A stretch of 64,000 nucleotides of DNA, taken from NCBI RefSeq assembly GCF_006345805.1, contig NC_043007.1, forward strand, positions 24,986,001 to 25,050,000. Direction: 5' to 3'. Origin of the DNA: Octopus sinensis. Taxonomy: Eukaryota. Shown in pieces: positions 931 to 58,815 of the stretch. The notes beneath the pieces were generated by a model. It worked only from the letters and a program-made list of their open reading frames with translations. It was not told the origin of the DNA and did not search any database. The stretch's first letter is position 1; the number at the start of each line of letters is the position of its first letter. The position numbers were made by a program, and so were the translations under genes.

Positions 931-3321
931 AAGCATTAGAGTGCTGGCCGAAATGCTTAGCGGTATTTCCCTCGTTGTTATGTTGTGAGTTTAAATTCTA
1001 CCAAGGTCAACTTTACCTTTCATCCTTTCGGGGGTCAATAAAAATAAGTACCAGTCGAACACTGGGATTGATGTAATCGACTAATCCCCTCCCCCAAAAT
1101 TACTGCAGTTGTGGCAAAATTTGAAACCATTATTACCAACCACACTTATTTCCATCATCTTACCAACCAGTCAAAAAAGAGGCTCTGGAAGGGTATTTAA
1201 ATATGGCTGACTCTTGATCAACAAGATTCACGACTACAACAAATAATGCTGGATACCATACCTCTGTTCTTAGAAGAGTAAAACCTATCTATCGCTAACC
1301 ATTTCCAATCTTCTTATTCAATAATCTCACCAGTTCAATAACCAGAATTACTACATTGGTCAAGAACACAATGCATTGTCTGGACCAGGAATTGAAATGG
1401 AAATCTTAGGATTGTAAGCACAACACCATAACCACTAAGCTATGAGTTTCCACTTGAGTGAACTGGAGCAATGTGAAATAAAGTGTTTTGCTCAGAAACA
1501 CAACGCGTCACTTGGTCCAGGAATCGAAATCGCAATCTTAGGATCTTGAATCCAACACTCTAACCACTAAGCCATGCACCTCCACAGCAAAACAGAAAGT
1601 TTAAAAAGCAAAAAGCCAACATAAGCAACCCTCTTTCAAAACAAGCAAGTGAACTCTGAACTAAAGCAGGGGTTCCCAAATTCAAATAAATTTATATCCT
1701 CACACCTGGGGTAAATTTGATGATTCTGGCTTTTTCTTTATTTTCCGAGTTGAAATGTTGCCAAAGTCAACTTTCTCTTTCATCCTTTCAGAGGCAATAA
1801 AATAAGTACCAGTTGTGCACTGGGGTAATATAATTGGCTAGTCTCCTAGTTTATTTTCTGTCTTATATTTGATAAAAGGAAGCTTTCCCGAAACTAATAG
1901 AAGCATTAAACAAGCTATGTAGAGTGAAACATTATCTTGTCTTTGTCATTACTTTGAGGTCATATTAAAAATATTTGTGTATACACACACACACACACGC
2001 ATGTATATGTATATGTATAAGTATATATATGTGTATATATGTATACATGTCATCATCAGCATCATTATCATTTAACATCTACTTGCCATGCTGGCATGGG
2101 TTGGATGGTTGGACAAGAAATGGCAAGCCAGAAGACTCTATTAAGTTCTATTGTCTGTTTTGATATGGTTTCTACAGCTGGATGCCCTTCCTAACATGTG
2201 TGTATGTGTGTCCATAGAGGGAGATGGATGGATGGATGGATGGATGGATGGATGGACGGACGGACGGACGGACAGACAGACGGACAGACAGACGGACAGA
2301 CAGACAGATAGATAGGCAGACAGGACGGAGAGATGTAAATATGCATATATCTTTTATTGAAATACCTATTAGCAGAGAATATAAGAATTAAAGAGTTAAC
2401 AGAAAGATTGGTGCTTTATGAAAGAATTCCCTTGTTAATATTTGTCCTACATTGAATCGAAGCAGACCTGTTCACCAACGACACAACTGCTCACATTTTG
2501 AGATATGAGATGAAGAAAAGAAGAGATATCGAGTGATATCATTGCAAGCAGTAATTTGATTAAAGTTTTGCTAAATACTAACGAGCTACTGGCCTCAATA
2601 TAATCAGCTATATGTCCCTCACCTGAATAATATTAGTGGTATTGAACATATGCTAAAAATCCTTATTGTAATGTGTCTCGATATAATGGAACAAGATGAA
2701 GAATATCGATCGATATCCACCAGAGCACGAATAAAATATCCAATAGATAGTCTATTGAGATATTGATTGATTTTTATTGCTAGTAGTAATTGGGATTAAG
2801 AGTGGCTAAGTACAAAAGTGGGATACATACTTTGTTAATTTAGATGCAAGCTAACTGTGAAATGTGGTGAGTTGGTGAAATATTTATCATACAATCCAGA
2901 CAAAAGAATCGGCAATCTTCAAAGATGGAATTGTGAATTATTTATTCATCACGTAACAGTGTCCAGTATTTTCTGCTTCTGGGATGGACATAACACTGTC
3001 AGTACACGTACACACACACACACATGGAAGCACACATGGAAACACACTGACAAATATATTAACATATACACATGAATAAGCACCATATATGATCACTGAG
3101 ACACCACAACACTTGCATGCATACGCAAAAACACAAACACACACATGTAAAAAAAAAAACACGTTCATGAATATATTAATACACATGCATAATCACCACA
3201 GACAATCAGATACACTGATGCAAAACACACACACACACACACGTAACTCAGAGAGATGACATAATGTTATTTATATATGTATGTGTGTATAAATTCATCT
3301 GAAGCATACAGAGGGGATTAA

Positions 3322-13935: not shown

Positions 13936-14483
13936 ATAATAGACATATATAAGATCTATTTTGTATAGATCTTATGTATGTCTATTATCACTGGTGCTGG
14001 TGCCACATAAAAAGCACTGGTGTATACAAAATATGTAGTTTGCTCACAGTTTTTAACATCTATACAGTGGAAAGTAAACCAATGTAAATAAATATTGTTA
14101 TTCTCTTCACATACAGACAAGCAAAGGAAATAACCCTGACATGTGCAAACTAACAAGATGTAAAACCCTGCTGTCTCTCATTAATATCTTTCCTGTCAAC
14201 TTTTCCCCAAAGAAGACCTGTCCAAAATGTTGGATTTTCCACTCCCCCATAGCAAGTTTACTATATTCTTTTTATTGATTTTTACCAAATAATACAATTC
14301 TTGCCGATACAGCCAACATCAGTTTTTGCGGAGTCTGTCTGATCATGTATTTGTATTTGTTTACTTTCGACAGCATAGGTATTAAAAAACTGTAGGCTGG
14401 CTGTATTAAATTTATCTTGGATTTTCTAATACATACCGTTTGTGAATAAACTGTTTAACTATAACTAATAAATGTATCGGTAC

Positions 14484-14884
14484 AGGCGTGACTGTGTGGT
14501 AAGAAGCTTGCTTCCCAACTACATGGTTCTGGGTTCAGTCCCATTCTTGGGCAAGTGTCTTCTACTATAGCCTCGGGCTAACCAAAGCCTTGTGTGTGAA
14601 TTTGGTAAACAGAAACTGAAAGAAACCCACCATATATATATATATATGTATGTATCTGTGTGTGTTTTTATGTCTGCGTTTGTCCCCAAATCACCATTTG
14701 AAAACCAGTGATGATGTGTTTATGTCCCCATAACTTTGCAGTTCGGCAAAAGGGACCAACAGAATAAGTACTAGACTTTAAATAAATAAGTCCTGGGGTC
14801 AATTTGTTTGACTAAAACTCTTGAAGGCAGTGCTCCAGCATGGCTGCAGTTCAATGACTGAAATAAGTAAGAGAATAAAAGAAT
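14484..14884 (+). mobile_element. Major ~400-bp SINE family A (tRNA-like head, CORE-like ACCTTGGGCAAGT motif, (TAAAAGAG)n tail)
   Basis: Same consensus recurs at least ten times in the window; also + at about 16712-17110 and 48068-48442. Confidence 0.8.
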
Positions 14885-16674: not shown

Positions 16675-17328
16675 AATATGAGGGGTTTAGTTCACTGATG
16701 ATCTAAATCAATAGGTATGCTGCGTTGCTACCCAACCACATGGTTCCGAGTTCAGTCCCACTGCGTGGTACCTTGGGCAAATGTCTTCTACTATAGCTTC
16801 AGGCCAACCAAAGCCTTGTGAGTGGAACTGGTAGACGGAAACTGAAAGAAGCCTGTCGTATATATGTATATGTATATATATATATATGTGTGTGTGTGTT
16901 TGTGTGTCTGTGTTTGTCTCCAAAACATCGCTTGACAACCGATGCTGGTGTGTTTACGTCCCTGTAACTTAGTGGTTTGGCAAAAGAGACCGATAGAATA
17001 AGTACTAGGCTTACAAAGAATAAGTCCTGGGGTCAATTTGATCGACTTAAAGGCAATGCTTCAGCATGGCCACATTCAAATGACTGAAACAAGTAAAAGA
17101 GTAAAAGAATAAACTGTAGATATCCAGTTGTGGATCTGAAGGCTGTTATGGAAGAGCAGGACACCTGGTGTGGAAGATTTGCATTGATCCAGGTAAATCA
17201 CCAGACAGAATAAACTGATCGGACAGAATGCTACATGGTATTTGATTAAAGTACAAGCACAAAGCCAACAGCAAAAATGAAGCATAAATTACATGGAATG
17301 GTTCAACCCCCATAACTCATTTCTTTAC

Positions 17329-20826: not shown

Positions 20827-22616
20827 AGTATGTATATTTTAGCTTTCTTTGAACAGACAGTATTTTAATGTTTCTTAATTTATTTTCAAGTGAACACCAT
20901 TACAAAAATTTCTTTTGACAAATCCAAAAACTATTTTAAAGTGAAAATGACTTTAAAAATACGGTAAATATTTTGTAAAAGACCCATTCATAACCACGGT
21001 GTGAAATAGTTCCTTTTTTTCCATATGTTTTTTTTCAAGTGCATTCAATGTATATCACCTCCAAAGATTTGGCTGCTACTTCTAGCACGCCTTGCTACCA
21101 TATAACAGCTATTTGTGATAAAGGACCCGAAAATACTTGTTACATGGTAGCAGGCATGCAAGAATAGCAGCCAAATGTTTCCTTTTCTAAGGAAGAGAGC
21201 CATTTATGAGTGATTTTTATGTCACATTTGTTGAAAGCATGTGAACTAACCTGGAAAAGAAAAAACCTACAAAACAAAACTCTGTTGCTAAGCAACTCAG
21301 TTTTCCAGTGACCTAATGGGTTATAGGTAGTCTAGTTTTATTATAAATGCAAAACAATACCACACACTCACCTCCCGAGTTTCGTTTTCCATACAGTATG
21401 TGAGATTTTTTGTTTATACATCTACGGTACACTCTCTTTACTCTTTTTACTCTTTTACTTGTTTCAGTCATTTGACTGTGGCCATGCTGGAGCACTGCCT
21501 TTAGTCAAGCAACTCGACCCCGGGGCTTATTGTTTTTGTAAGCCCAGTACTTATTCTATCGGTTTCTTTTTGCCGAACCGCTAAGTGACGGGGACGTAAA
21601 CACACCAGCATCGGTTGTCAAGCAATGCTAGGGGAACAAACACAGACACACAAACACACACACATACATATATATATATATACATATATACGACACTTCC
21701 AGTTTCCGTCTACCAAATCCACTCACAAGGCATTCGCAGAAGACACTCGCGCAAGATGCCATGCAGTGGGACTGAACCCGGAACCATGTGGTTGGTTAGC
21801 AAGCTACTTACCACACGGCCACTCCTGCACCTGCCACTCCGTATTTTCTTTTAATATCTTTTAATTAATGTTTTATGCAGTACTGTACTCTATTTTTATT
21901 TATTAATTTTTAGGTGTGAAGATGTTTATTTTACCATATAATTAATTAAAATCTAAAAAAATACAAATACCTATGGGTGAAATACTGCTAAGCAATTCAC
22001 CTGGTGTGCTAATGAGTCTTCTAACTCGTCACCTTTAATCCTTTCTACTGAAAAAGGAGTATAGTTGATTACATTAACCCACCCCACCCAGTACTCGACT
22101 GGAACTATTTTCATTGACCCTGGAGGGATGACAGGCAAAGTCAACCTCAGTAGAATTGAACTCAAAGGGTAGCAACGGATGACATGCTGGTATGTATTTC
22201 ACCTGGCACACTAACGATTCTGCCAGCTCGCTGCCTTACCTTACAAATTAGTAGAAATAATGGAGAGTAACTAGCACCATGTATGTTCCATGGTGTTGTA
22301 ACATGTATTTTCGGGTCCTTTATCACAAATAGCTGTTACATGGTAGCAAGGCGTGCTAGAAGTAGCAGCCAAATCTTTGGAGGTGATATACATTGAATGC
22401 ACTTGAAAAAAAAAAAATATGGAAAAAAAGGAACTATTTCACACTGTGGTTATGAACGGGTCTTTTACGAAATATTTACTGTATTTCTAAAGTCATTTTC
22501 ACTTTAAAATAGTTTTTGGATATGTCAAAGGAAATTTTTGTAATGGTATTCACTTGAAAATAATTTAAGGAACATTAAAATATTGACTGTTTAAAGAAAG
22601 CTCAAATATAAATACT
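20827..22616. repeat. Inverted duplication: ~318-bp arms (20827-21144, 22297-22616) with a 1.15-kb spacer
   Basis: Arms align as reverse complements with scattered substitutions; no TSD found. Confidence 0.88.
21430..21838 (-). mobile_element. SINE family A
   Basis: Full-length reverse copy with a small internal deletion. Confidence 0.8.
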
Positions 22617-24840: not shown

Positions 24841-26445
24841 CACTCACACACACACACTCACACACATGCACACACAATATAGGGAATGTTATTTAAATTT
24901 TGCACTAATCCAGTCAACATGCAAGCCACCATTATTTACTTATTTCTTAAATGAACCAAAACAAATTATTTTTTTTCTCAGCTACAAGAAACAACAATAA
25001 CAACAACATTATCACTAACAACAACAACAACTACCACAGCTAAAACAACAACAACAACAATAACAACAGGAATAATATCTTTACTTCTTTAAAGCCAGCA
25101 CTTTCATGATTTCATTTCTTTGTTGTGGGAATCAAAATTTTATAACACAAAACAAAGAATATCTCATTATACGATACTAGATGTTATCACATTATGCACT
25201 TTTACTGGACCAGCCAATAGGCAAGTTACTACATGGTCACTTGACTAGCTGGCAAAGCAGTCAAATCTTCCTCTAAATCACATCATCACAGCCTTTTAAC
25301 GTCCACTTTTCCATGCTTGCATGAGTCATATGGAATTTGTTGAGGTAGATTTTTTTTTCTATGAGCAGATGCCCTTCCTGTCATCAACCCTCACCTGCTG
25401 GCAAGGAAGGTAACATTCCCCCATAGCCAGACATGTTTCCATGCAGGCCTGGAAACAAAGGACACTGTTTATATGATGGTGAAACTCATTTACAACAATC
25501 ACAATATGTCAAGATAAGGAAAAATTCACATACACACACACAAAGCAGACATTAAACGATAATGATGATGATGATACACAAAAATAATATATATACAACA
25601 TATATATATATCACCATCATCATCATTTAACATCCGTTGTCCATGTTGGCATGGGTTAGACCAGGGCTGATAAGCTGAGGGTCTGTATCAGACTTATATT
25701 TATATGTATGTATGAATGTATGTATGTATGTACATACATGCATATATGTATGTATGTACATACGTGCATACATACATACGTACATACATGAAACTCTGAG
25801 TAACAGCTTTTGTTATATTTCTGCTGCTTTTAAATAAAGTGTATATATATATATATATATATATATATCTTGATGAGCCTCTTTTAGTTTCCTATTAATA
25901 GACCCACTCACAAGCCTTTAGTCAGCCTGGGACTATACTAGAGGACATTTGCCAAAGGTGCCATGCAGTGTTACTGAATCCAGAACTCCAGCCAAAAATC
26001 TCTTACCTTGTATCAAAATACATTACAGGACCATTAAGGATTTTTAATATAATATGCTTCTTTACAGTGCATAAGCGACATCAGCTCCAGCATTTTCCAT
26101 TTTATTTAATAATTGATGTTTTTATTCAGCTGCCAATTGTAATTAGATAGCAGTGTTGTTCTTACTCTTATCAATATGCCTGAAGGAAGTACTTTGGCTG
26201 GAGTATCATTGCTTGAACTTGCCCTCCACCATTCCTATGTAATGTTTACTATTGATTGACCCATTTGAATTAGTAGAGGTAAGTATGACTTTGTATGCTA
26301 AAGACTTGGTGTTAGAAAGTAAGTTCAGTGTACATGCTTCAGTGTCTTTGTTAAGGCATCTTGTTTCTATGGTCTTCACCATTTGTATATTAAGATGGTT
26401 TTCATTTCACAAGTGCAACATTATTCACTTTCAAACATCTCTTTT

Positions 26446-26860
26446 ATACTCTTTTACTCTTTTACTTGTTTCAGTCATTTGACTGCGGCCATGCTGGAGC
26501 ACCGCCTTTAGTCGAGCAAATCGACCCCAGGACTTATTCTTTGTAAGCCTAGTACTTATTCTATCGGTCTCTTTTGCTAAACCGCTAAGTGACGGGGACG
26601 TAAACATACCAGCATCGGTCGTCAAGCAATGCTAGGGGGACAAACACAGACACACAAACATATACACACACATACATATATATATATATACATATATGCA
26701 ACGGGCTTCTTTCAGTTTCCGTCTACCAAATCCACTCACAAGGCATTGGTCGGCCCAAGGCTACAGCAGAAGACACTTGCCCAAGATGCCATGCAGTGGG
26801 ACTGAACCCAGATCCATGTGGTTGGTAAGCAAGCTACTTACCATACAGCCACTCCTGCGC
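26446..26860 (-). mobile_element. SINE family A
   Basis: Full-length reverse copy next to the Penelope relic. Confidence 0.8.
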
Positions 26861-27180
26861 CTGTTGAAATTTTTTTCAAGTAGTGGTGACAGTCATAAAA
26901 ATGCTTATCTACTAGTGCTAGGAAAATTTGGGCTATGTTGGTTTTTACATCCAATGAGTATGGGGATGTGAACAAGATAGGATAGCGGGGCCTGTTCTTA
27001 TTTGGGAAACGGTGGTTAGGCACATGCAGAGATTTGTCTTTGACACCACTATTTACAGAAGGACTACTGTAATATGAAATGGTTCTATCAAAAATCTCTT
27101 TGATAGAAGAGAGGTTTGGGATCCTTCTGCTGAGGTTGTTGACTAGATTTTTGAAATCTATGGTTGGTGACAAAACATGT
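26860..27180 (-). mobile_element. Penelope-like retroelement ORF relic (RT thumb to GIY-YIG linker)
   Basis: ORF 26838-27173 reads PILFTSPYSLDVKTNIAQIFLALVDKHFYDCHHYL then (frameshift) EKNFNR, matching the Penelope motif FNPPYS.NVKTNI...FL.L.DKHF...H.L.KIFNR. Confidence 0.75.
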
Positions 27181-33309: not shown

Positions 33310-34085
33310 GGTAAAAACTAAAGTGTTTGACCCAAGCAAAAAAAAAAAAGTGCAATAGGTGTACAACATGTAGCAAACAAATATGAAAAAACAATGCGTA
33401 CTGGTAAATGGGGTGCAGGTGAGAGGACTTGGAAAATTCACATCAGGAATGTTCCAAGTTCCCACACCACTTTTCCGTCTGTCAGTGAAATTTGTTTTTC
33501 TTCATATTCATCTACTACACATTATTTTACACCTAGTACACTATTTCTTTTTCAATTTTTGTGATGGGGGTGGGTGGGGTGTGGACTCGGATAATTCACA
33601 CAATCCAGTAAACCCACTTTGACACTCAGTCACAAAAATGAAAAAAAAAACATAGTGTAATAGGTATAAAACAACATGTAGCAAACAAATATGAAAAAAA
33701 AGGCGCACTGGCAAATGGAGGGGTGCAAGAGAGGACTCGGAAAATTCAGGCCTTGACCTTTAAACTCCAGTGTTTGACCTGAGTTACTGGATCGTGTGAA
33801 TTATCCGAGTCCACACTCCACCCCAACACAAAAATTGAAAAAAAAAATAGTGTACTAGGTGTAAAATAATGTGTAGTAAATGAATATGAAGAAAAAAAAT
33901 TTTTTCTGACGAACAGGAAAGTGGTGAAAGGACTCGGAACATTCCCGATGGGAATTTTCTGAGACCTCTCCCCTGCACCCTGTTCACCAGCATCCATTTT
34001 TTTTTCATATTCGTTTACTACACACTATTTTACACCTATTGCACTAGTTTTTTCTTTTGCTCGGATCAAACCCTTTAGTTTGACC
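33310..34085. mobile_element. Modular fold-back element built from an internally palindromic ~300-bp unit
   Basis: 33310-33630 and 33775-34085 are inverted copies; the spacer holds a third subunit; ends share AAACTAAAG(T/G)GTTTGA(C/T)CC; it splits a SINE-tail-type repeat. Confidence 0.65.
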
Positions 34086-42367: not shown

Positions 42368-43574
42368 TATATATATATAGATATATATATAAAGGAAAAT
42401 CTATCACCTTACACACATACACACACATATTCTTTTATTCTGTTATTGGTTTCAGTCACTTGACTGCAGCCATGCTGGAGCATCACCTTTAATCAAACAA
42501 ATCGACCCCAGGAGTTATTCTTTGCAAGCCTAGTACTTATTCTATTGGTCTCTTTTGCCAAACAGTTGTCAAGTGATGGTGGGGGGACAAACACATATAC
42601 AAACGCACACACACACACACACACACACATATATGATGGGCTTCTTTCAGTTTCTGTCTACCAAATCCACTCACAAGGCTTTGGTCGACCTGATGCTATA
42701 TATAGTAGAAGACACTTGCCCGAGGAGCCACACAGTAGGACTGAACCTGGAATCATGTGGTTGGGAAGCAAGCTTCTTACCACACAGCAACACAAATATG
42801 TGTGAGTTTTATGTATAATTATGCAAAAAGACATTTAAATATTAAATGAGAAAGCACTAAATAATATATATATGCAGAGAACAAATTATATTCTTATAGT
42901 TTTTATAAAGGAAAGCTTGACAAGGCTTTCAATATTTCAAAGATGGAATGGTTGGCTTAATAAGACTATCTGATAATGCCATCCATTGGTAAAACCTCAA
43001 AGCCATTGTCAACCTTCTCTTTGCCAGATACACACACATACACACATGTGCATACATGCACAAACCCACATACTGCAATTCAAATTCCAGTGTGCCTTAT
43101 CTATCATTCAATCACTAGTCTACAAATATCATCTGATAAGTGAAAAACACATATATAAATTGAGAACACAAAAAAAGATGAGAAATATAGATACTTAGTT
43201 AAACGAAATGTAATTATATTATGATATTGAGATGCTGTCCTCTTTTTGAATGCAACATTTCATAAACATATTTAAAGTAATGCAATTTACAAAATCAGAA
43301 CAGATACAAACTCTTTAGATATTTTCACAGGATTGTCATAACATCACAGGTAATGTCATAAGCAACCTCAGTAAGATATACATTTATTATGTATAAGATA
43401 TACGTAGTATAAAATCTGTTTTCTATACAATATAGTCTGTCTGTTATATAATCTATGTATATTCCATGGAGTTTATTAAGGACATATTCTGTATATGGTC
43501 TATGTGTTATACACTATCCTGACTAATGTGGCTAAGAAGTTTGCTTCTCAACCACATGGCTTTAGTGTCACATA

Positions 43575-43910: not shown

Positions 43911-44581
43911 ACTCTATAAAGTGGTTGGCATATTTTTTTTTTTACTTGTTTCAGTCATTTGACTGCGGCCATGCTGGAGCACCGCCTTTAGTCAAGCAAA
44001 TCAACCCCGGGACTTATTCTTTGTAAGCCCAGTACTTATTCTATCGCTCTCTTTTGCCGAACTGCTAAGTGATGGGCACGTAAACACACCAGCATCTGTT
44101 GTCAAGCAATGCTAGGGGGTCAAACACAGACACGCAAACACACACATACACATATACACGACAAGCTTCTTTCAGTTTCTGTCTACCAAATCCACTCACA
44201 AGGCATTGGTCGGCCCGGGGCTATAGCAGAAGACACTTGCCCAAGATGCCACACAGTGGGACTGAACCCGGAACCATGTGGTTGGTTAGCAAGCCACTTA
44301 CCACACAGCCACTCCTACGCCAATATATATATTTATTTATTTATTTATTTATATATGGTTGTTATATTTTTTTGATAACATAATAGGTTAGACAGGATGA
44401 TGTCTGTATTACAATAACCAAAATATGATATTCATGTATAGTAATATTACAATCACGAAATTAGCATTAGCTTGTCTCACTCTTTCTTGCGGAACCCTAG
44501 GAACACTGATATAGACAAAGGATTAGGGGGAAAGGAAAAGGAACAATATACAAAAGTATCAAAGAAAGCTTAGCTTCTTAC

Positions 44582-44690: not shown

Positions 44691-46879
44691 CTGCAATATA
44701 ACAGGCCAAATATATGTAAAATCTCAAGTTTGTCAATCTCTTTTACTCTTTTGGTTGTTTCAGTCATTTGACTGTGGCCATGCTGGAGCACCGCCTTTAG
44801 TCAAGCTAATCGACCCCCAGGACTTATTCTTTGTAAGCCTAGTACTTATTCTATCGGTCTCTTTTGCCGAACCGCTAAGTTACGGGGACGTAAACACACC
44901 AGCATCGGTTGTCAAGCGATGTTGTGGGGGACAAACACAGACACACAAATATATATACACACACACATACATATATACAACGGGCTTCTTTCAGTTTCCG
45001 TCTACCAAATCCCCTCACAAGGCTTTGGTCGGCCCGAGGCTATAGTAGAAGATACTTACCCAAGGTGCCACGCAGTGGGAGTGAACCTGGAACCATGTGG
45101 TTGTAAGCAAGCTACTTACCACACAGCCACTCCTATGCCAATGTTTATCAATCTTAAGTATGCAAATCAAACCAAAAGGATTTAAGATGCTAAAGCAAAT
45201 CAACAGCTATCTAGCAAGGTGCCATGTACCTCCAACCATCAAAATCAATTTTTATCCCATCTGGTTAAGTTCTCTTGACAGATGAATTATCTCACAACCC
45301 CTGCAACCATCATTCAGCTTGTAGCTGACACAAGGTCTCTCTACAGCAGGTAGCACAATTAAATGCACCCAGTATACATAGTAAAGTTTTTGTGATAGGA
45401 AGGGTATTAACTGATAAAAATCGTTCCTAAATTAAGGATATACACAACAGAGTTACCAGTGTTTCTTGATGTTGAAGAATTGCTCTCGGTTGTGTGACAA
45501 AAGACTAAGGTGAGTGTTAAGAGGGAGAATCCTGGCTGGTGGTGATATGTTGGACTATGATGGATTGTGAGATATTAATACCCATACAACCCATACCAGC
45601 AGGGAAAATACACACACACACGCACACACACATGCACACACACACACACTCACTCACACTAACATATACACACACACTCACTCACACTAACATATAACAC
45701 ACACATACATGCGATGGGCTTTTTGCAGTTTCTGTCTACCAAATTCATTCACATTGCAAAGGTTTACTTCTTGGAAAATATTTAGGAAACACCATTGAAA
45801 AACTCAGGAAAAATCATGAGAAAATGTTGCGAAAGAAAGAGATGGATATTCATAGATATGTATTTATACACACACACATAGATATTTATTATGTATCATT
45901 ATTCTTCAATACTATACCCCACTCAGTTGAGGGTACTGGTATTGTGAGTGCTTGATAACCTCACCAATGTTGGTACCATGAAAAGAGCCCCCGGTGCACT
46001 CTGTAAAGTGTTTGAAATTAGGAAGTGACCCCAGCAGTAGAAACCCCAAATCAAAGCAGACACTGGAACTTGGCACAGCCCTTTAACTCATCAGTTCTAG
46101 TCAAAATGTACAAGACACTGCTACCACCATCAATGCTTCCGCTTCCTCTGATGCTGCTACCACCACCGATACTGGCACTAATGACAACAATGACAGTCTG
46201 TATACATACATATACATACATATTCAAATATATGTGTTGGGATATGTGTGTTCATATGCACATATACAAATTAATTATTAGTTTATTGACTGTGTTTGGT
46301 TGTTGTCGCTACCCGTGACCAGAAATTACAAACAACAATAACAAAAAAAACATAAAAAACATTCCCCATTAAAAGAAGACAAAACAAAAGAAAATAAAAA
46401 GAAAGCATAAAGCGAAATTAATTAACTGAGTAATTAATTACACACTTCTAACACAGTCATTCCCTATCTTACCAATATGGTTAACAACGTTTCTCAGGCC
46501 TTTACGAGACATAATTGGGCAGAAAATGAAGCTACTGCTTTGATAAACATTCTTTTGATTCTCATAATTGACAATGAAACATATAGGATGTGCAATAAAA
46601 TCACTACAAAACCTGCTTATAACACAACTGAGAGACAGGTTAAAAATAAATTTGAAGAAATCTCAAAATTACTTCATTGAGTGTGCATGGAGAAGCTAGA
46701 AATTGTTATTGGTTAATGAATAGAGCATTAACATTTGACTCTACTTCAGTAAGTCAGAATCTGTATCAACAAGCTGATATCCAGCAGCTGAAATGCAACT
46801 GACAACAGTAAATCGCTATCGCTATGGTAGTTCCTTTTGATCAAAGAATCTCCTACTGCTATCCATGACCAGCCCACTC

Positions 46880-48005: not shown

Positions 48006-48587
48006 CCTTTTAGCATTCAGATTATTCTGTTAAATGTAATATTTACTTATTCATATTGTTTTCAATCAAGGAGTGGCTGTGTGGTAAGTAGCTTGCTTTC
48101 CAACCACGTGGTCCCAGGTCCAGTCCCACTGCGTGGCACCTTGGGCAAGTGTCTTCTACTATAGCTTCAGGCCGACCAAAGGCTTGTGAGTGGATTTGGT
48201 AGACAGAAACTGGAAGAAGCCCGTCGTATATGTATATATGTATATGTATGTGTGTATATATGTTTGTGTGTCTGTTTGTCCCACCCAACATTGCTTGACA
48301 ACCGTAACTTAGCAGCTCGGTAAAAAGTGACCAATAGAATAAGTACTAGGCTTACAAAGAATAAGTCCTGGGGTCGATTTGCTCGACTAAAGGCGGTGCT
48401 CCAGCATAGCCACAGTCAAATGATTGAAACAAGTAAAAGAGTATCTTGTAGCTTCAAGATTTCGATGATGTGATCTTTCATTTTGAGATACATTATAGGA
48501 TAGATGTGAGGAGCCAGATTGGGCCAGTTTGAACAAAGAACAGGTAAAATGTTTGGGCCAGATATGGCCAGTTTAAACGCTAAAGGG
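48006..48587. mobile_element. Second copy of the TTAA MITE, split by a SINE at about 48068-48442
   Basis: ttaa|ccttttagc ... gctaaaggg|tcaa; the two halves match 37178-37398. Confidence 0.7.
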
Positions 48588-51215: not shown

Positions 51216-51271
51216 CTGTGGTTCAGTTATCATAGAAATAAAGAGGAAAAAGAAATCACTGATATATATAC

Positions 51272-51669
51272 ACTTTTACTCTTTTACTTGTTTCAGTCAT
51301 TTGACTGCGGCCATGCTGGAGCACCGCCTTCAATCGAGCAACTCGACCCCGGGACTTATTCTTTGTAAGCCCAGTACTTATTCTATCGGTCTCTTTTGCC
51401 GAACTGCTAAGTGACAGGGACATAAACACACCAACATCGGTTGTCAAGCAATGCTAGGGGGACAAACACAGATACACAAACACACACACATACACATACA
51501 TATATATGCGACAGGGTTCTTTCAGTTTCCGTCTACCAAATCCACTCACAAGGCTTTGGTCGGCCCGAGGCTATAGTAGAAGACACTTGCCCAAGGTGCC
51601 ACACAGTGGGACTGAACCCGGAAGCATGTGGTTGGTAAACAAGCTACTTACCACACAGCCACTCCTGCA

Positions 51670-51672
<3 letters not shown>
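51272..51672 (-). mobile_element. SINE family A
   Basis: Full-length reverse copy about 55 bp from the acceptor of exon 51057-51215. Confidence 0.8.
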
Positions 51673-51706
<34 letters not shown>

Positions 51707-52527: not shown

Positions 52528-52592
<65 letters not shown>

Positions 52593-52593
<1 letters not shown>

Positions 52594-52830
52594 TTTATTT
52601 AAAGCAGCAGAAAATTCAACAAAACCTGTTACTCTGAGTTTCACGTTCCCGTTCGTCGGACAGTTTTTGCTAGAATTCTAGCTAAAACTGTCCGACGAAC
52701 GGGAACGTGAAACTCAGAGTAACAGGTTTTGTTGAATTTTGTGCTGCTTTAAATAAAGCATATTACTCTACCACTGGTATTTGAGTACTCTTTTTTCCAA
52801 AATTGTTTCACAATTATGTGTTTACTCTGG
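52593..52830. mobile_element. 166-bp palindrome plus 72-bp tail embedded in (TA)n; probable Penelope-type pLTR fragment with inversion
   Basis: 83-bp arms with 2 mismatches centred on GCTAGAATTCTAGC; (TA)n on both sides; related terminus at about 25789-25839 also next to (TA)n. Confidence 0.75.
52684..52730 (+). ncRNA. Minimal type I hammerhead ribozyme fold (mirror copy on the minus strand in the left arm)
   Basis: Stem I CTGT(52688-91)/ACAG(52722-25); core CCGACGA 52692-98 (C where canonical U4 is); stem II ACG-GGAA-CGT; GAAA 52709-12; stem III ACTC-A-GAGT; GUA triplet ending at A52721. Confidence 0.7.
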
Positions 52831-53859
52831 TATATATATATATATGATGACAACGGTGGTGATAACGATGATAATGATGTGACATGACAAAATGTATCAG
52901 TGCAAATTATTTATTTACTTGTCAGAAAACAAAAATTCCTTGTTTGTTTGTTTTTCTCCCTGACACAAGACAAATGAACTAAACTCATTAGATGTCTCAT
53001 ATTCCTTGATACGCAAATAGTCTCTGAGAAGATTTGAATTCGAAACCTTTACTTCTAAATAAAGGGCACTAACCCAACCCCATTATGTTTCCAGTTCGAA
53101 AACTGATAGGGTCAGCTTTTACCTTCAACCTTCCCAAGTTGATAAAACAAAGTAGCTACGGCAGTTAATAATCTGTACAATTTACGGTATCATTGCCAGT
53201 CAAAGATACCATAAACTGTATGTGTGTGTGTGTGTGTAAATAGATATCTGTGTGTGTGTGTGTGTGTATGTGGTGTGTGTGTGTATGTGGTGTGTGTGTG
53301 CACGTGTGCTTTGTGTATGTATATATATAAATATGACAGGCTTCTTTCAGTTTCCATCAACTAAATCCACTTACAAGGCTTTTGTTGGCCCAAGGCTATC
53401 GTAGAAGACACTAGCCCAAGGTGCCACGCAGTGGGACTGAACCTGGAACCGTGTGGTCGGAAAGCAGACTTCTTACCACACAGCCATGCCTACACCCCCC
53501 ACCACCACACACACACACATGAATGTACAATATATGTATACCGGATTCATATAATTTAGAGGTATTAAGCGGGTAAGACAAATATGTTCCTATATGGAAA
53601 TAATTTCAGATTCATCCATAATCAGGTTATTGTGCTAACATATTATAATGTATTATAACATTTTAACAAGTTTGTTCAAGACTTTAACAAGATTACATTC
53701 TTAAGTGTAAGCCATTACTTACATGAAACTCCATGTAACGCTAATATAATTATAACTATTAATGTAATTATAACTTAACCATTTTCCTGATATATATTAG
53801 TGCTACAAACCATTATATGTATGTGTGTATATATGCACAAATACACACACACACATATT

Positions 53860-58409: not shown

Positions 58410-58815
58410 CTTACTCTCTTTCTCTTTTACTTGTTTCAGTCATTTGACTGCGGCCATGCTGGAGCACCGCCTTTAGTCGATCAAATCGACCCCGGGACTT
58501 ATTCTTTGTAAGTCCAGTACTTATTCTATCGGTCTCTTTTGCCGAACCGCTAAGTAACGGGGACGTAAACACACCAGCATCGGTTGTCAAGCAATGCAAG
58601 GGGGACAAACACAGACACACAAACCCACACACACACACACACATATATATGTATACATATATACGACAGGCTTCTTTCAGTTTCCGTCTACCAAATCCAC
58701 TCACAAGGCATTGGTCGGCCCGGGGCTATAGCAGAAGACTCTTGCCCAAGATGCCACGCAGTGGGACTGAACCCGGAACCATGTGGTTGGTTAGCAAGCT
58801 ACTTACCACACAGCA
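58410..58815 (-). mobile_element. SINE family A
   Basis: Full-length reverse copy. Confidence 0.8.

What the first reader, a model, noticed from the sequence alone, without database searches (positions are those of the whole stretch)
52593..52830. Short palindrome in (TA)n containing a compact hammerhead fold on both strands
Seen: 83-bp arms with 2 mismatches, a 72-bp tail, and (TA)n on both sides. The arm reads CTGT-CCGACGA-ACG(GGAA)CGT-GAAA-CTCAGAG-TA-ACAG, a complete minimal type I topology with a GNRA-capped 3-bp stem II and a near-palindromic stem III. Position 4 of the core is C rather than the canonical U, in both arms. There is no visible similarity to the 470-bp unit, so this is a second family with the same design. 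Inference: a 5'-truncated Penelope-type pLTR with the inversion typical of these elements.
Basis: partly seen in the sequence, partly recalled or inferred. Interest (0 to 1): 0.88.

Follow-up and report, generated by a model that had tools for sequence, protein, structure and literature searches.

The report
Inverted Penelope-like retroelement stub with hammerhead
This is a dead, head-to-head double copy of the 155-base terminal repeat of a very abundant Penelope-like retrotransposon, inserted into a TA microsatellite; its hammerhead-ribozyme motif is genuine by descent but carries a known weakening change, so the finding is real yet ordinary for such a genome.

Summary
There are 83-nt arms with 2 mismatches, a 72-nt tail and (TA)n on both sides. 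Each arm holds a type-I minimal hammerhead whose core reads CCGACGA.

The unit is the pseudo-LTR of a roughly 3.5-kb Penelope-like element (PLE). Its ORF (705-712 aa in intact copies) folds like telomerase reverse transcriptase and ends in a GIY-YIG-type nuclease domain.

The genome holds 4,281 exact copies of a degenerate 32-nt stretch of the motif:
- CUGAUGA (canonical), 61%. This type includes all sampled copies next to intact ORFs.
- CCGAUGA, 23%.
- CCGACGA (the window's type), 15%.

Relatives from other animals (43-57% protein identity) keep a covarying hammerhead at the same place, almost always with U4. C4 is therefore a subfamily trait, not the family consensus.

Thousands of copies end at one of two fixed points 72 nt apart, each abutting (TA)n. 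This matches the two internal reverse-transcription start sites shown for an anole PLE.

Both window arms stop at unit position 1, where the direct arm of most sampled copies also stops.

The window's subfamily consists almost only of such short units, so it is probably non-autonomous. Cleavage activity was not tested. This is a new member of a known kind, of modest interest.

The parts
52531..52592 (.). (TA)31 microsatellite; left part of the target site
   Evidence: TRF reports period 2, 31 copies, 100% matches. Genome-wide, both kinds of element terminus abut TATATA thousands of times.
52593..52675 (-). Inverted arm: pLTR unit positions 83 to 1 read on the minus strand. Its outer end is the tail-less terminus (...CTTTAAATAAAG).
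   Evidence: It differs from the reverse complement of the right arm at 2 of 83 positions. The same tail-less outer end occurs in 19 of 19 sampled head-to-head pairs. There are 3,319 tail-less ends followed by TATATA in the genome.
52626..52663 (-). Hammerhead-type motif (C4 variant) on the minus strand; the predicted scissile bond lies 3' of the base complementary to 52630
   Evidence: Descriptor hit.
52676..52758 (+). Direct arm: pLTR unit positions 1-83, starting at TTCTAGC. This is where the direct arm of most sampled copies ends and where the upstream repeat of a full-length copy starts.
   Evidence: It matches the 3' end of ORF-bearing copies at 91-92% identity (L075 and L063 against the window).
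52688..52725 (+). Hammerhead-type motif. Helix I is CTGT/ACAG (extendable to AAAACTGT/ACAG-G-TTTT). The core is CCGACGA. Helix II is ACG-GGAA-CGT, followed by GAAA. Helix III is CTCAGAG (near-palindromic). The cleavage-site dinucleotide is UA, so the predicted cut is after A52721.
   Evidence: Homologous motifs with covariation occur in relatives. Rfam models do not detect it.
52759..52830 (+). 72-nt 'tail': unit positions 84-155, ending ...GTTTACTCTGG. In full-length copies this sequence runs straight on into the 5' UTR and ORF.
   Evidence: the unit, tail included, ends 19-22 nt before the open frame begins and 67 nt before the first ATG in L075/L076. There are 3,984 tailed ends followed by TATATA.
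52831..52845 (.). (TA)n; right part of the target site
   Evidence: Sequence read.

Best explanation
The object is a retrotransposition product of a Penelope-like element (PLE) family that targets (TA)n.

[quoted passage not shown] It is flanked by a 155-nt direct repeat (pLTR) that carries a type-I minimal hammerhead.

Shown:
- The family, its ORF and its pLTR arrangement.
- Two alternative fixed termini 72 nt apart, both abutting (TA)n.
- Variable inner junctions between the arms.
- A rule that a head-to-head pair has one tail-less and one tailed end.
- A hammerhead conserved with covariation among relatives.

Inferred mechanism:
1. Both strands of a (TA)n site were nicked.
2. Each 3'-OH primed reverse transcription on a short RNA that starts at unit position 1. 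One cDNA started at the upstream site (position 83) and the other at the downstream site (position 155).
3. Both cDNAs ran off the RNA 5' end.
4. Each cDNA then used the other as template after an end-to-end template jump. This yields the exact centre ...GCTAGAA|TTCTAGC....

The window copy belongs to the CCGACGA/GGAA subfamily, which consists almost only of such short units. It is therefore probably a SINE-like, non-autonomous pLTR lineage mobilised in trans.

The hammerhead here is inherited baggage. With C4, and locked in an 83-bp hairpin, this copy is very unlikely to cleave. Nothing suggests a host function.
For: Family and copy number: the unit has at least 66 scored matches (803 first-look candidates) at 88-100% identity.

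Structure of copies: copies share fixed outer ends but have variable inner junctions, and some run upstream. Walking upstream gives 2.5 kb or more of shared sequence, with an RT-like ORF (FYPSIS...YRDDG) and a GIY-YIG-like C-terminus. There are at least 126 RT matches, many inside open frames of 721-728 codons (705-712 aa from the first ATG). In full-length copies the whole unit lies just upstream of the ORF.

Protein identity: the AlphaFold model has pLDDT 86.9, and its best PDB match is TERT 3du5 at E 3.5e-9. A 43%-identical Solemya velum homologue passes Pfam GIY-YIG (26.2 bits against a cut-off of 22.6). That stretch aligns to ORF residues about 591-616.

Termini: 3,319 tail-less and 3,984 tailed ends are followed by TATATA, with 0 control matches. 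The partner of a tailed arm is tail-less in 19/19 pairs. In 8/8 fully resolved pairs on contig C1 the two ends differ. The probabilities under independence are 3e-7 and 0.004.

Hammerhead in relatives: 8 of 9 outgroup loci carry a hammerhead about 190 nt upstream of the ORF, just downstream of it, or between tandem ORFs. L083 shows none and has only 178 nt of upstream sequence. On alignment A2, 88% of cells pair against 73% in shuffles, and 10 of 12 pairs show compensatory change (0/500 shuffles reach this).

Short-unit subfamily: only 2 of about 333 intact copies of the window's subfamily extend upstream of position 1. The figure for the sister CCGACGA/GCAA type is 24 of about 293 (Fisher p 8e-7).

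Literature: PLE insertions are 5'-truncated, often have an adjacent inverted copy and a tail at one end only, and show (TA)n bias (PMC8557442). The tail equals the stretch between two internal RT start sites, both target strands are cleaved and extended, and the hammerhead is not needed for insertion in vitro (PMC11167929).
Against: - Pfam finds nothing in the octopus-type ORF itself, and a profile search of PDB sequences finds nothing. RT identity therefore rests on fold, and GIY-YIG identity on transfer from a homologue plus motifs read by eye.
- Rfam hammerhead models match neither the window copy nor a canonical-core copy.
- The hammerhead topology is not the favoured monomer fold (-1.6 against an MFE of -7.0 kcal/mol).
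- The two-cDNA/template-jump mechanism and the 'RNA starts at position 1' step are inferred from junctions only. No transcript data were available.
- The subfamily sizes used for the short-unit argument are extrapolated from the first 100 listed matches.
- The ages rest on small, ascertainment-biased samples.
Confidence: 0.88

Rival explanations
1. It has the same origin, but there is no independent short lineage. The 155-nt units would be mere by-products of an autonomous master with the same hammerhead type. They could arise from reverse transcription started in the 5' pLTR, or from short pLTR-initiated transcripts of long copies. That master would now be lost or unsampled.
For: Short units of the youngest, ORF-linked type (CTGATGA...CGAG) are also very common and form the same roughly 240-nt head-to-head products. 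Examples are C1:41706130-41706370 and C1:46435727-46435961. Autonomous copies can therefore spawn such units.
Against: Only 2 of about 333 intact copies of the window's type run upstream of position 1, against 24 of about 293 for the sister type. Two diagnostic substitutions are shared by hundreds of short copies but by almost no long copy.
Confidence: 0.3
2. It is a foldback or MITE-type DNA transposon with long terminal inverted repeats that targets TA.
For: The copy is a perfect palindrome flanked by TA repeats, and the whole 238-nt shape recurs elsewhere.
Against: Inner junctions differ from copy to copy. Many copies have no inverted arm at all. The same sequence is the 3' end and the upstream repeat of an RT/nuclease-encoding element. 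The two arms are systematically unequal by 72 nt.
Confidence: 0.02
3. It is an exapted locus: a hairpin RNA (small-RNA precursor) or an active ribozyme gene used by the host.
For: The read-through RNA would form an 83-bp hairpin (-145.6 kcal/mol). Several miRNA covariance models score the hairpin below their thresholds.
Against: All Rfam hits lie far below gathering scores and merely reflect any long hairpin. The locus is one of thousands of near-identical insertions. There is no conservation evidence beyond the family, and C4 plus the hairpin argue against cleavage.
Confidence: 0.03
4. The hammerhead-like motif is a chance resemblance and the family has no ribozyme ancestry.
For: One core mismatch is needed. 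Such relaxed hits occur by chance in about 8% of shuffled windows. Rfam does not recognise it.
Against: The majority of family copies have the canonical core. Relatives at 43-57% protein identity keep the motif at the homologous place, with compensatory changes in all three helices.
Confidence: 0.02

Closest known systems
Minimal type-I hammerheads in the pseudo-LTRs of metazoan Penelope-like elements (Cervera & De la Pena 2014, PMC4209133)
   Same: - The motif lies in the pLTR.
- Helix I is short.
- Helix III is tiny and near-palindromic, which suggests action as a dimer.
- Most genomic motifs occur as single dispersed copies from truncated elements.
- Motifs sometimes lie close together on opposite strands.
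   Different: - Helix II here is only 2-3 bp plus GNRA, whereas the described families have 6-8 bp.
- The 10.1-11.1 pair is A-U or a mismatch, not the 'highly conserved G-C'.
- There is no extra base between positions 9 and 10.1.
- The window's subfamily has C4.
Poseidon PLE of Anolis carolinensis, PAc (Frangieh et al. 2024, PMC11167929)
   Same: - Insertions end at two discrete internal RT start sites, and the interval between them is the 'tail'.
- The target is AT-rich.
- Both target strands are used.
- The hammerhead is dispensable for insertion in vitro.
   Different: - The tail here is 72 nt, against 30-40 nt.
- The start sites lie upstream of the ORF rather than 111-118 nt inside it.
- The hammerhead cut site is about 175 nt upstream of the ATG rather than 26 nt downstream.
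- In vitro no start-site difference was seen between strands. Here head-to-head products always combine one of each.
- The nuclease linker carries a cysteine motif (Neptune/Nematis type).
Neptune / Naiad PLEs with (TA)n insertion bias (Arkhipova 2006; Craig et al. 2021, PMC8557442)
   Same: - Microsatellite (TA)n targeting.
- A cysteine-rich linker before the GIY-YIG core.
- Partial tandems, adjacent inverted copies and a one-sided tail.
   Different: - The nuclease is C-terminal, so this is not a Naiad.
- Clade placement among Neptune, Nematis and others was not tested by phylogeny.
Animal 'non-LTR retrozymes' (tandem hammerhead repeats, circRNA-forming; bioRxiv 10.64898/2026.07.22.740005)
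   Same: Both are short, non-coding, hammerhead-bearing derivatives of PLE pLTRs that are presumably mobilised in trans.
   Different: Retrozymes are direct tandem arrays that cleave to unit-length circles. These units are dispersed singles or head-to-head pairs. No arm of the 19 sampled pairs ends at the cleavage site, and 38% of intact motifs carry C4.
Natural U4C hammerhead variant of a viroid (cited in Perreault et al. 2011, PMC3088659)
   Same: It has the same core substitution. That paper describes it as considerably lowering activity in vitro yet remaining compatible with biological function.
   Different: The context differs (a viroid with tertiary loop contacts), and no activity data exist for the PLE version.

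Membership tests
Endonuclease-bearing Penelope-like element (insertion / pLTR) | Reverse transcriptase of the telomerase-like type | tested here: met
   The ORF of full-length copies was modelled at pLDDT 86.9. The best PDB fold match is TERT 3du5 at E 3.5e-9, followed by other RTs. The YRDDG motif is present. Pfam RVT_1 does not hit the ORF itself, but it is on record for a neighbouring relative.
Endonuclease-bearing Penelope-like element (insertion / pLTR) | GIY-YIG endonuclease fused to the RT (C-terminal in canonical clades) | tested here: inconclusive
   There is no direct Pfam hit on the ORF. A 43%-identical homologue passes PF01541 (26.2 bits, above the 22.6 cut-off). The matched stretch aligns to ORF residues about 591-616, in the C-terminal domain. 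Conserved VVY...Y(I/T)G...R...H...C-x2-C...E motifs appear in the alignment.
Endonuclease-bearing Penelope-like element (insertion / pLTR) | Pseudo-LTRs from partial tandem arrangement | tested here: met
   The whole 155-nt unit occurs just upstream of the ORF in full-length copies and forms the 3' end of ORF-bearing copies. Same-strand motifs 3,345 nt apart flank an RT match on C1. A relative shows head-to-tail ORFs with period 2,513 nt.
Endonuclease-bearing Penelope-like element (insertion / pLTR) | 5' truncation, an adjacent inverted copy, and a 'tail' at one end only | tested here: met
   5' ends and junctions vary between copies. All 19 sampled head-to-head pairs are tailed plus tail-less. 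There are two discrete termini 72 nt apart.
Endonuclease-bearing Penelope-like element (insertion / pLTR) | Hammerhead motif in the pLTR | tested here: met
Neptune/Nematis-type PLE (as opposed to Penelope/Poseidon) | Extra Zn-finger-like cysteine motif in the linker before the GIY-YIG core; placement in an RT phylogeny | tested here: inconclusive
   The ORF has C-x7-C-x5-C (KKCNFKNESSCPLEGKC), and relatives have CNCR..CPLxGxC. No reference PLE set was available for a tree.
Hammerhead ribozyme, type I | Core C3 U4 G5 A6 N7 G8 A9 / G12 A13 A14 / A15.1-U16.1 / H17 | tested here: not met
   The window copy has C at position 4 in both arms, and all other core positions fit. In the family, 61% of intact motifs are fully canonical. 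In relatives, 9 of 10 distinct motifs have U4.
Hammerhead ribozyme, type I | Three helices around the core, supported by covariation | tested here: met
   On alignment A2, 88.3% of cells pair against 73.2% in shuffles. 10 of 12 pairs show change on both sides (0/500 shuffles), and slid controls pair at 28-47%. RNAalifold on its own recovers helix I only.
Hammerhead ribozyme, type I | Watson-Crick 10.1-11.1 pair (usually G-C) closing helix II | tested here: not met
   It is A-U in the window, A.G or A.A in sister subfamilies, and U.U in most relatives. 9 of 11 sequences are unpaired at this position. A U.U mismatch here is a described natural variant (PMC3088659).
Hammerhead ribozyme, type I | Match to the curated Rfam covariance models | tested here: not met
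   No hammerhead family appears at E <= 10 for the window copy or for a canonical-core copy.
Hammerhead ribozyme, type I | Self-cleavage 3' of H17 | not testable with these tools
   This needs a transcription/cleavage assay. The thermodynamic model does not favour the monomer fold.
Animal non-LTR retrozyme | Direct tandem repeats of a short hammerhead unit giving unit-length circular RNA | tested here: not met
   The window has one inverted pair and no direct tandem. The sampled copies are singles or head-to-head pairs.
MITE / foldback DNA transposon | Fixed terminal inverted repeats and target-site duplication, with no RT-encoding parent | tested here: not met
   The arms are unequal, the inner junctions vary, and the parent is an RT/nuclease element.

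The most novel reading that the evidence does not exclude
Two things in these data go beyond the textbook picture and are not excluded.

(1) Lineages whose hammerhead core carries U4C amplified to at least 1,600 still-intact copies (38% of all intact motifs). One of them is made almost only of 155-nt solo units. This would be in-vivo evidence that hammerhead catalysis is dispensable for PLE-type retrotransposition, or that U4C is rescued by the element's protein.

(2) Head-to-head products always join one cDNA started at the upstream site to one started at the downstream site. This would mean that both cDNAs are copied from a single RNA held by a dimeric RT-nuclease. In vitro work has not shown such coupling.
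Probability: 0.3. Interest if true: 0.55.

Novelty: new member of a known kind. Interest (0 to 1): 0.3.

Why it matters
For genome annotation, it explains a class of short palindromes in (TA)n tracts that is easily mistaken for MITEs, miRNA hairpins or ribozyme genes. These are stereotyped by-products of Penelope-like retrotransposition, and they number in the thousands here.

For PLE biology, the family offers a large natural data set. It has two sharply defined termini 72 nt apart, obligatorily asymmetric head-to-head products, and a preferred 5' end. It also has canonical and U4C hammerhead subfamilies that both proliferated. These features bear on how the elements prime on both target strands and on whether the hammerhead is needed at all.

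The window copy itself has no sign of function.

Tried and rejected
- Rfam, at gathering and permissive thresholds, gave no hammerhead. The only hits were sub-threshold miRNA/snoRNA/UTR models that respond to any long hairpin. I rejected these as evidence of an RNA gene.
- Pfam on ORF pieces, on the whole ORF and on 25 aligned relatives gave nothing for the octopus-type ORF. A PDB sequence-profile search gave nothing. I fell back on fold comparison.
- I first read the series CCGACGA -> CCGATGA -> CTGATGA as CpG decay that creates a canonical core late, because the canonical subfamily is the youngest. Outgroup elements with U4 make U4 the ancestral state of the clade. The direction inside this genome (surviving canonical lineage or CpG-driven reversion) is therefore left open.
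The inverted repeat at 33.3-34.1 kb has only a poor CTGACGA...GAAA look-alike that fails the descriptor.
- RNAalifold on a MAFFT alignment recovered only helix I. Helices II and III had to be tested with a structure that I supplied.
- The dimeric hammerhead cannot be scored with nested-structure energy models. Only the helix III self-duplex was scored (-7.4 kcal/mol).

Full report
**1. The observation**

Window 52593-52830 is as described.
- The repeat finder gives a spacer-less inverted repeat, 52588-52675 / 52676-52763, 88 nt and 97% complementary.
- The 83-nt arms 52593-52675 / 52676-52758 differ at two positions, arm positions 8 and 66. A 72-nt non-palindromic tail follows, 52759-52830.
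- (TA)31 precedes the element and about 15 nt of (TA)n follow it.
- Each arm contains CTGT-CCGACGA-ACG(GGAA)CGT-GAAA-CTCAGAG-TA-ACAG, at 52688-52725 (+) and 52626-52663 (-). The predicted cleavage is after A52721.
- A descriptor of this architecture hits dinucleotide-shuffled windows 0.02 times per 64 kb with the canonical core, and 0.08 times when any one core letter may differ. The motif alone is therefore only suggestive.
- 'On both strands' follows from the inversion. An RNA through both arms would form a perfect hairpin (-145.6 kcal/mol). That hairpin is also why several miRNA models give sub-threshold Rfam hits.

**2. It is a member of a large repeat family**

The window lies in a 2.72-Gb eukaryotic assembly. 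From memory, the size and the roughly 30 chromosome-scale contigs suggest an octopus. This was not tested.
- The 155-nt right half has at least 66 scored matches (803 first-look candidates) at 88-100% identity.
- Reading 30 copies with their flanks shows a fixed 3' end...GTTTACTC(T/C)GG, followed by (TA)n.
- Where an inverted arm exists, its outer end is fixed at ...CTTTAAATAAAG (unit position 83, no tail) and again abuts (TA)n.
- The junction between the arms differs from copy to copy.
- Of the 30 copies, 26 stop within 6 nt of unit position 1 and 4 continue upstream.

**3. The parent element**

- Walking upstream gave 2.5 kb or more of shared sequence, including an internal AT-rich microsatellite.
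- The shared sequence holds an ORF with FYPSIS...YRDDG and a C-terminal ...CNFKNESSCPLEGKC...GVVYRAK...YTGAS...C-x2-C...E region.
- The genome has at least 126 matches to the RT part, many inside open frames of 721-728 codons. From the first ATG the ORF is 705-712 aa.
- In such copies the complete unit, tail included, ends 19-22 nt before the open frame begins and 67 nt before the first ATG in L075/L076. One copy begins exactly at TTCTAGC after (TA)n.
- Two same-strand motifs 3,345 nt apart flank an RT match on contig C1.
- The layout is therefore (TA)n - [unit 1-155] - 5' UTR - ORF - about 1.2 kb 3' UTR - [unit 1-155] - (TA)n.

Evidence on the protein domains:
- Pfam recognises nothing in the ORF, and a PDB sequence profile finds nothing.
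- An AlphaFold model built on 25 relatives (pLDDT 86.9) has the telomerase catalytic subunit as its best PDB fold match (3du5, E 3.5e-9), followed by other reverse transcriptases.
- A 43%-identical homologue from Solemya velum passes Pfam GIY-YIG. The matched stretch aligns to the C-terminal domain of the ORF.
- The cysteine motif before that domain is the feature that the literature uses to separate Neptune/Nematis from Penelope/Poseidon. It has been proposed to mediate microsatellite targeting (PMC8557442). I did not test clade placement.

**4. The two termini and the inversion**

- Genome-wide, 3,319 tail-less ends (...AAATAAAG) and 3,984 tailed ends (...ACTCYGG) are followed directly by TATATA. 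The reversed-pattern control gave none.
- In my sample of 19 head-to-head pairs, chosen only for having a tailed arm, the partner arm is tail-less 19 times.
- In the position lists for contig C1, all 8 pairs whose two ends are both resolved combine one tailed and one tail-less end.
- Under independent choice these outcomes have probabilities 3e-7 and 0.004.
- Products with the same overall shape and size as the window's recur, for example C1:41706130-41706370.

This matches published PLE features. Insertions are 5'-truncated, often have an inverted copy next to them, and carry a tail often present at one end only (PMC8557442). In the anole PLE the tail is the stretch between two internal reverse-transcription start sites, and the protein cleaves and extends both target strands (PMC11167929).

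My inferred mechanism for the window copy is as follows.
1. Two cDNAs were primed from the two strands of a (TA)n site, at positions 83 and 155 of a short RNA beginning at unit position 1.
2. Both ran off the RNA 5' end.
3. Each was completed on the other after an end-to-end template jump. This reproduces the exact centre GCTAGAA|TTCTAGC.

The strict asymmetry is most simply explained if both cDNAs copy one RNA. The upstream site would have to be used first, because a cDNA started downstream would cover the upstream site. That step is inference. None of the 19 partner arms ends at position 47, the hammerhead cut site. There is therefore no sign that cleaved RNA served as template, as in the anole study.

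**5. The hammerhead**

Counts of a degenerate 32-mer spanning helix I to helix III total 4,281 exact matches, with 0 control matches:

| Core | Copies | Share |
|---|---|---|
| CTGATGA | 2,604 | 60.8% |
| CCGATGA | 977 | 22.8% |
| CCGACGA | 652 | 15.2% |
| CTGACGA | 48 | 1.1% |

- The scarcity of CTGACGA shows that CCGATGA is a true subfamily, not random CpG decay of CCGACGA.
- All seven sampled copies next to long ORFs carry CTGATGA together with two other diagnostic changes. That subfamily has the lowest internal divergence, 1.3% against 2.5-3.1% (small, biased samples).
- The window copy belongs to the CCGACGA / GGAA-loop / T11.1 subfamily, which is about half of the CCGACGA class.

Relatives at 43-57% protein identity were recovered from public assemblies.
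- 8 of the 9 outgroup loci have a type-I minimal hammerhead about 190 nt upstream of the ORF, just downstream of it, or between tandem ORFs. L083 shows none; it has only 178 nt of upstream sequence. The Solemya velum locus carries the motif about 100 nt downstream of each ORF end.
- The core is CTGANGA in 9 of the 10 distinct motifs. One reads CCGAAGA, a second natural C4.
- On an 11-sequence alignment, 88.3% of cells pair against 73.2 +/- 2.2% in shuffles. 10 of 12 pairs show compensatory change (0/500 shuffles), and slid controls pair at 28-47%.
- The 10.1-11.1 position is a mismatch in 9 of 11 sequences (U.U in most relatives; A.G, A.A or A-U in the octopus-type copies).
- Subfamily-diagnostic changes fall on N7, the N of the GNRA loop, the helix-I bulge, 11.1 and U4.

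The motif is thus a genuine PLE hammerhead by descent and structure, and U4 is ancestral for the clade.

Three caveats remain.
- Rfam's hammerhead models miss both the C4 and the canonical versions.
- The monomer hammerhead fold is not thermodynamically preferred (-1.6 against -7.0 kcal/mol). The near-palindromic helix III could pair between two copies (-7.4 kcal/mol), as proposed for PLE minimal hammerheads (PMC4209133).
- U4C is described as considerably lowering activity in vitro while remaining compatible with viroid infectivity (PMC3088659). Activity here is untested.

**6. Is the window's subfamily a lineage of its own?**

- Only 2 exact copies of the CCGACGA/GGAA type carry even 4-6 nt of parental 3' UTR in front of position 1.
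- The sister CCGACGA/GCAA type has 24 such copies.
- With subfamily sizes of about 333 and 293, extrapolated, this is a twelve-fold depletion (Fisher p 8e-7).

The simplest reading is that the diagnostic changes arose in a short, solo-pLTR source that is mobilised in trans. That would make it a SINE-like derivative, in line with the view that short hammerhead repeats of animals derive from PLE pLTRs (bioRxiv 10.64898/2026.07.22.740005). The rival reading is an unsampled or extinct autonomous master. I give the short-lineage reading roughly 55-60%.

**7. Verdict**

- The object is an inert product of a known kind of element, made by a mechanism that the literature already outlines.
- It is a new member of a known kind. 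I cannot show that this family has been named, although Penelope-like families are reported as numerous in an octopus repeat annotation (PMC13282606).
- What is mildly new is quantitative: a 72-nt tail, strict start-site asymmetry in head-to-head products, and the coexistence of canonical and U4C subfamilies that both proliferated.

Noticed in passing
L030 (G000:C14:41495363-41498516), both flanks of the element; also L026 upstream flank: In L030 the host DNA outside the two (TA)n tracts is itself an inverted duplicate for 40 nt or more (TCAGTATCAACCAAATTCATTTTA[C/T]AACTTATTGCC on both sides). The palindrome therefore extends beyond the element. L026 has a separate roughly 55-nt palindrome centred on TA repeats just upstream. 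I have no explanation for either.
   Followed up: no
L008 (G000:C8:34476168-34479319), 3' end of the element: The last roughly 18 nt of the tail plus TATA (GTGTTTACTCTGGTATAT) are repeated three more times after the element's end. This looks like repeated initiation or slippage at the downstream start site.
   Followed up: no
L054 (G000:C17, locus around 38049954-38050072), downstream hammerhead: One copy has an internal deletion running exactly from A9 of the core to the predicted cleavage site (...CCGATGA|ACAGGTTTTG...). It is the only junction seen that coincides with the hammerhead cut site.
   Followed up: no
L082:2614-2658: A relative from an unrelated public assembly carries a second natural C4 hammerhead (GGGCGA-CCGAAGA-A-GGCC...GGCC-GAAA-CGCATG-TA-TCGCCC) between two tandem PLE ORFs. 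Its helices I and II are well formed.
   Followed up: partly
G000:C1:56860746-56864122: An RT match with only 73% protein identity and 7 stop codons is flanked by two perfect 32-nt hammerhead words of the youngest subfamily, 3,345 nt apart. Either the low identity is an artefact of frameshifts or the ends are far better kept than the body. I could not fetch the sequence.
   Followed up: no
L079:441-673 versus L075 upstream region: Between elements that are only 57% identical in protein, the non-coding hammerhead and part of the tail (ACTCTAC..CTG..TATTGAGTACT.TTTT.TCC) are still alignable; overall identity is 56% over 245 columns. This suggests constraint on the reverse-transcription start region.
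   Followed up: partly
window 26874-27167 (-): There is a weak tblastn match (34% identity over 101 aa, E 2e-8) to residues 422-522 of the PLE ORF. It is a fragment of a different, older Penelope-like family.
   Followed up: no
window 14467-14884, 16725-17112, 21432-21833, 26445-26862, 42428-42789, 43940-44333, 44739-45142, 48069-48443, 51267-51704, 58411-58815: A roughly 400-bp dispersed repeat has at least 10 copies in the window (72-93% identical). It has a tRNA-like end and is often next to microsatellites, so it looks like a tRNA-derived SINE. It is not related to the finding and carries no hammerhead motif.
   Followed up: partly
window 33315-33611 / 33784-34081: An inverted repeat of about 300 nt (83% identity) of another element. 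It contains a poor hammerhead look-alike at 33902-33939 (CTGACGA...GAAA) that fails the descriptor.
   Followed up: partly
window 1512-1581 (-): The only Rfam match at gathering score in the window is a tRNA-like sequence (29.3 bits, threshold 29) with a damaged T arm. It is probably a SINE head or a tRNA pseudogene.
   Followed up: no
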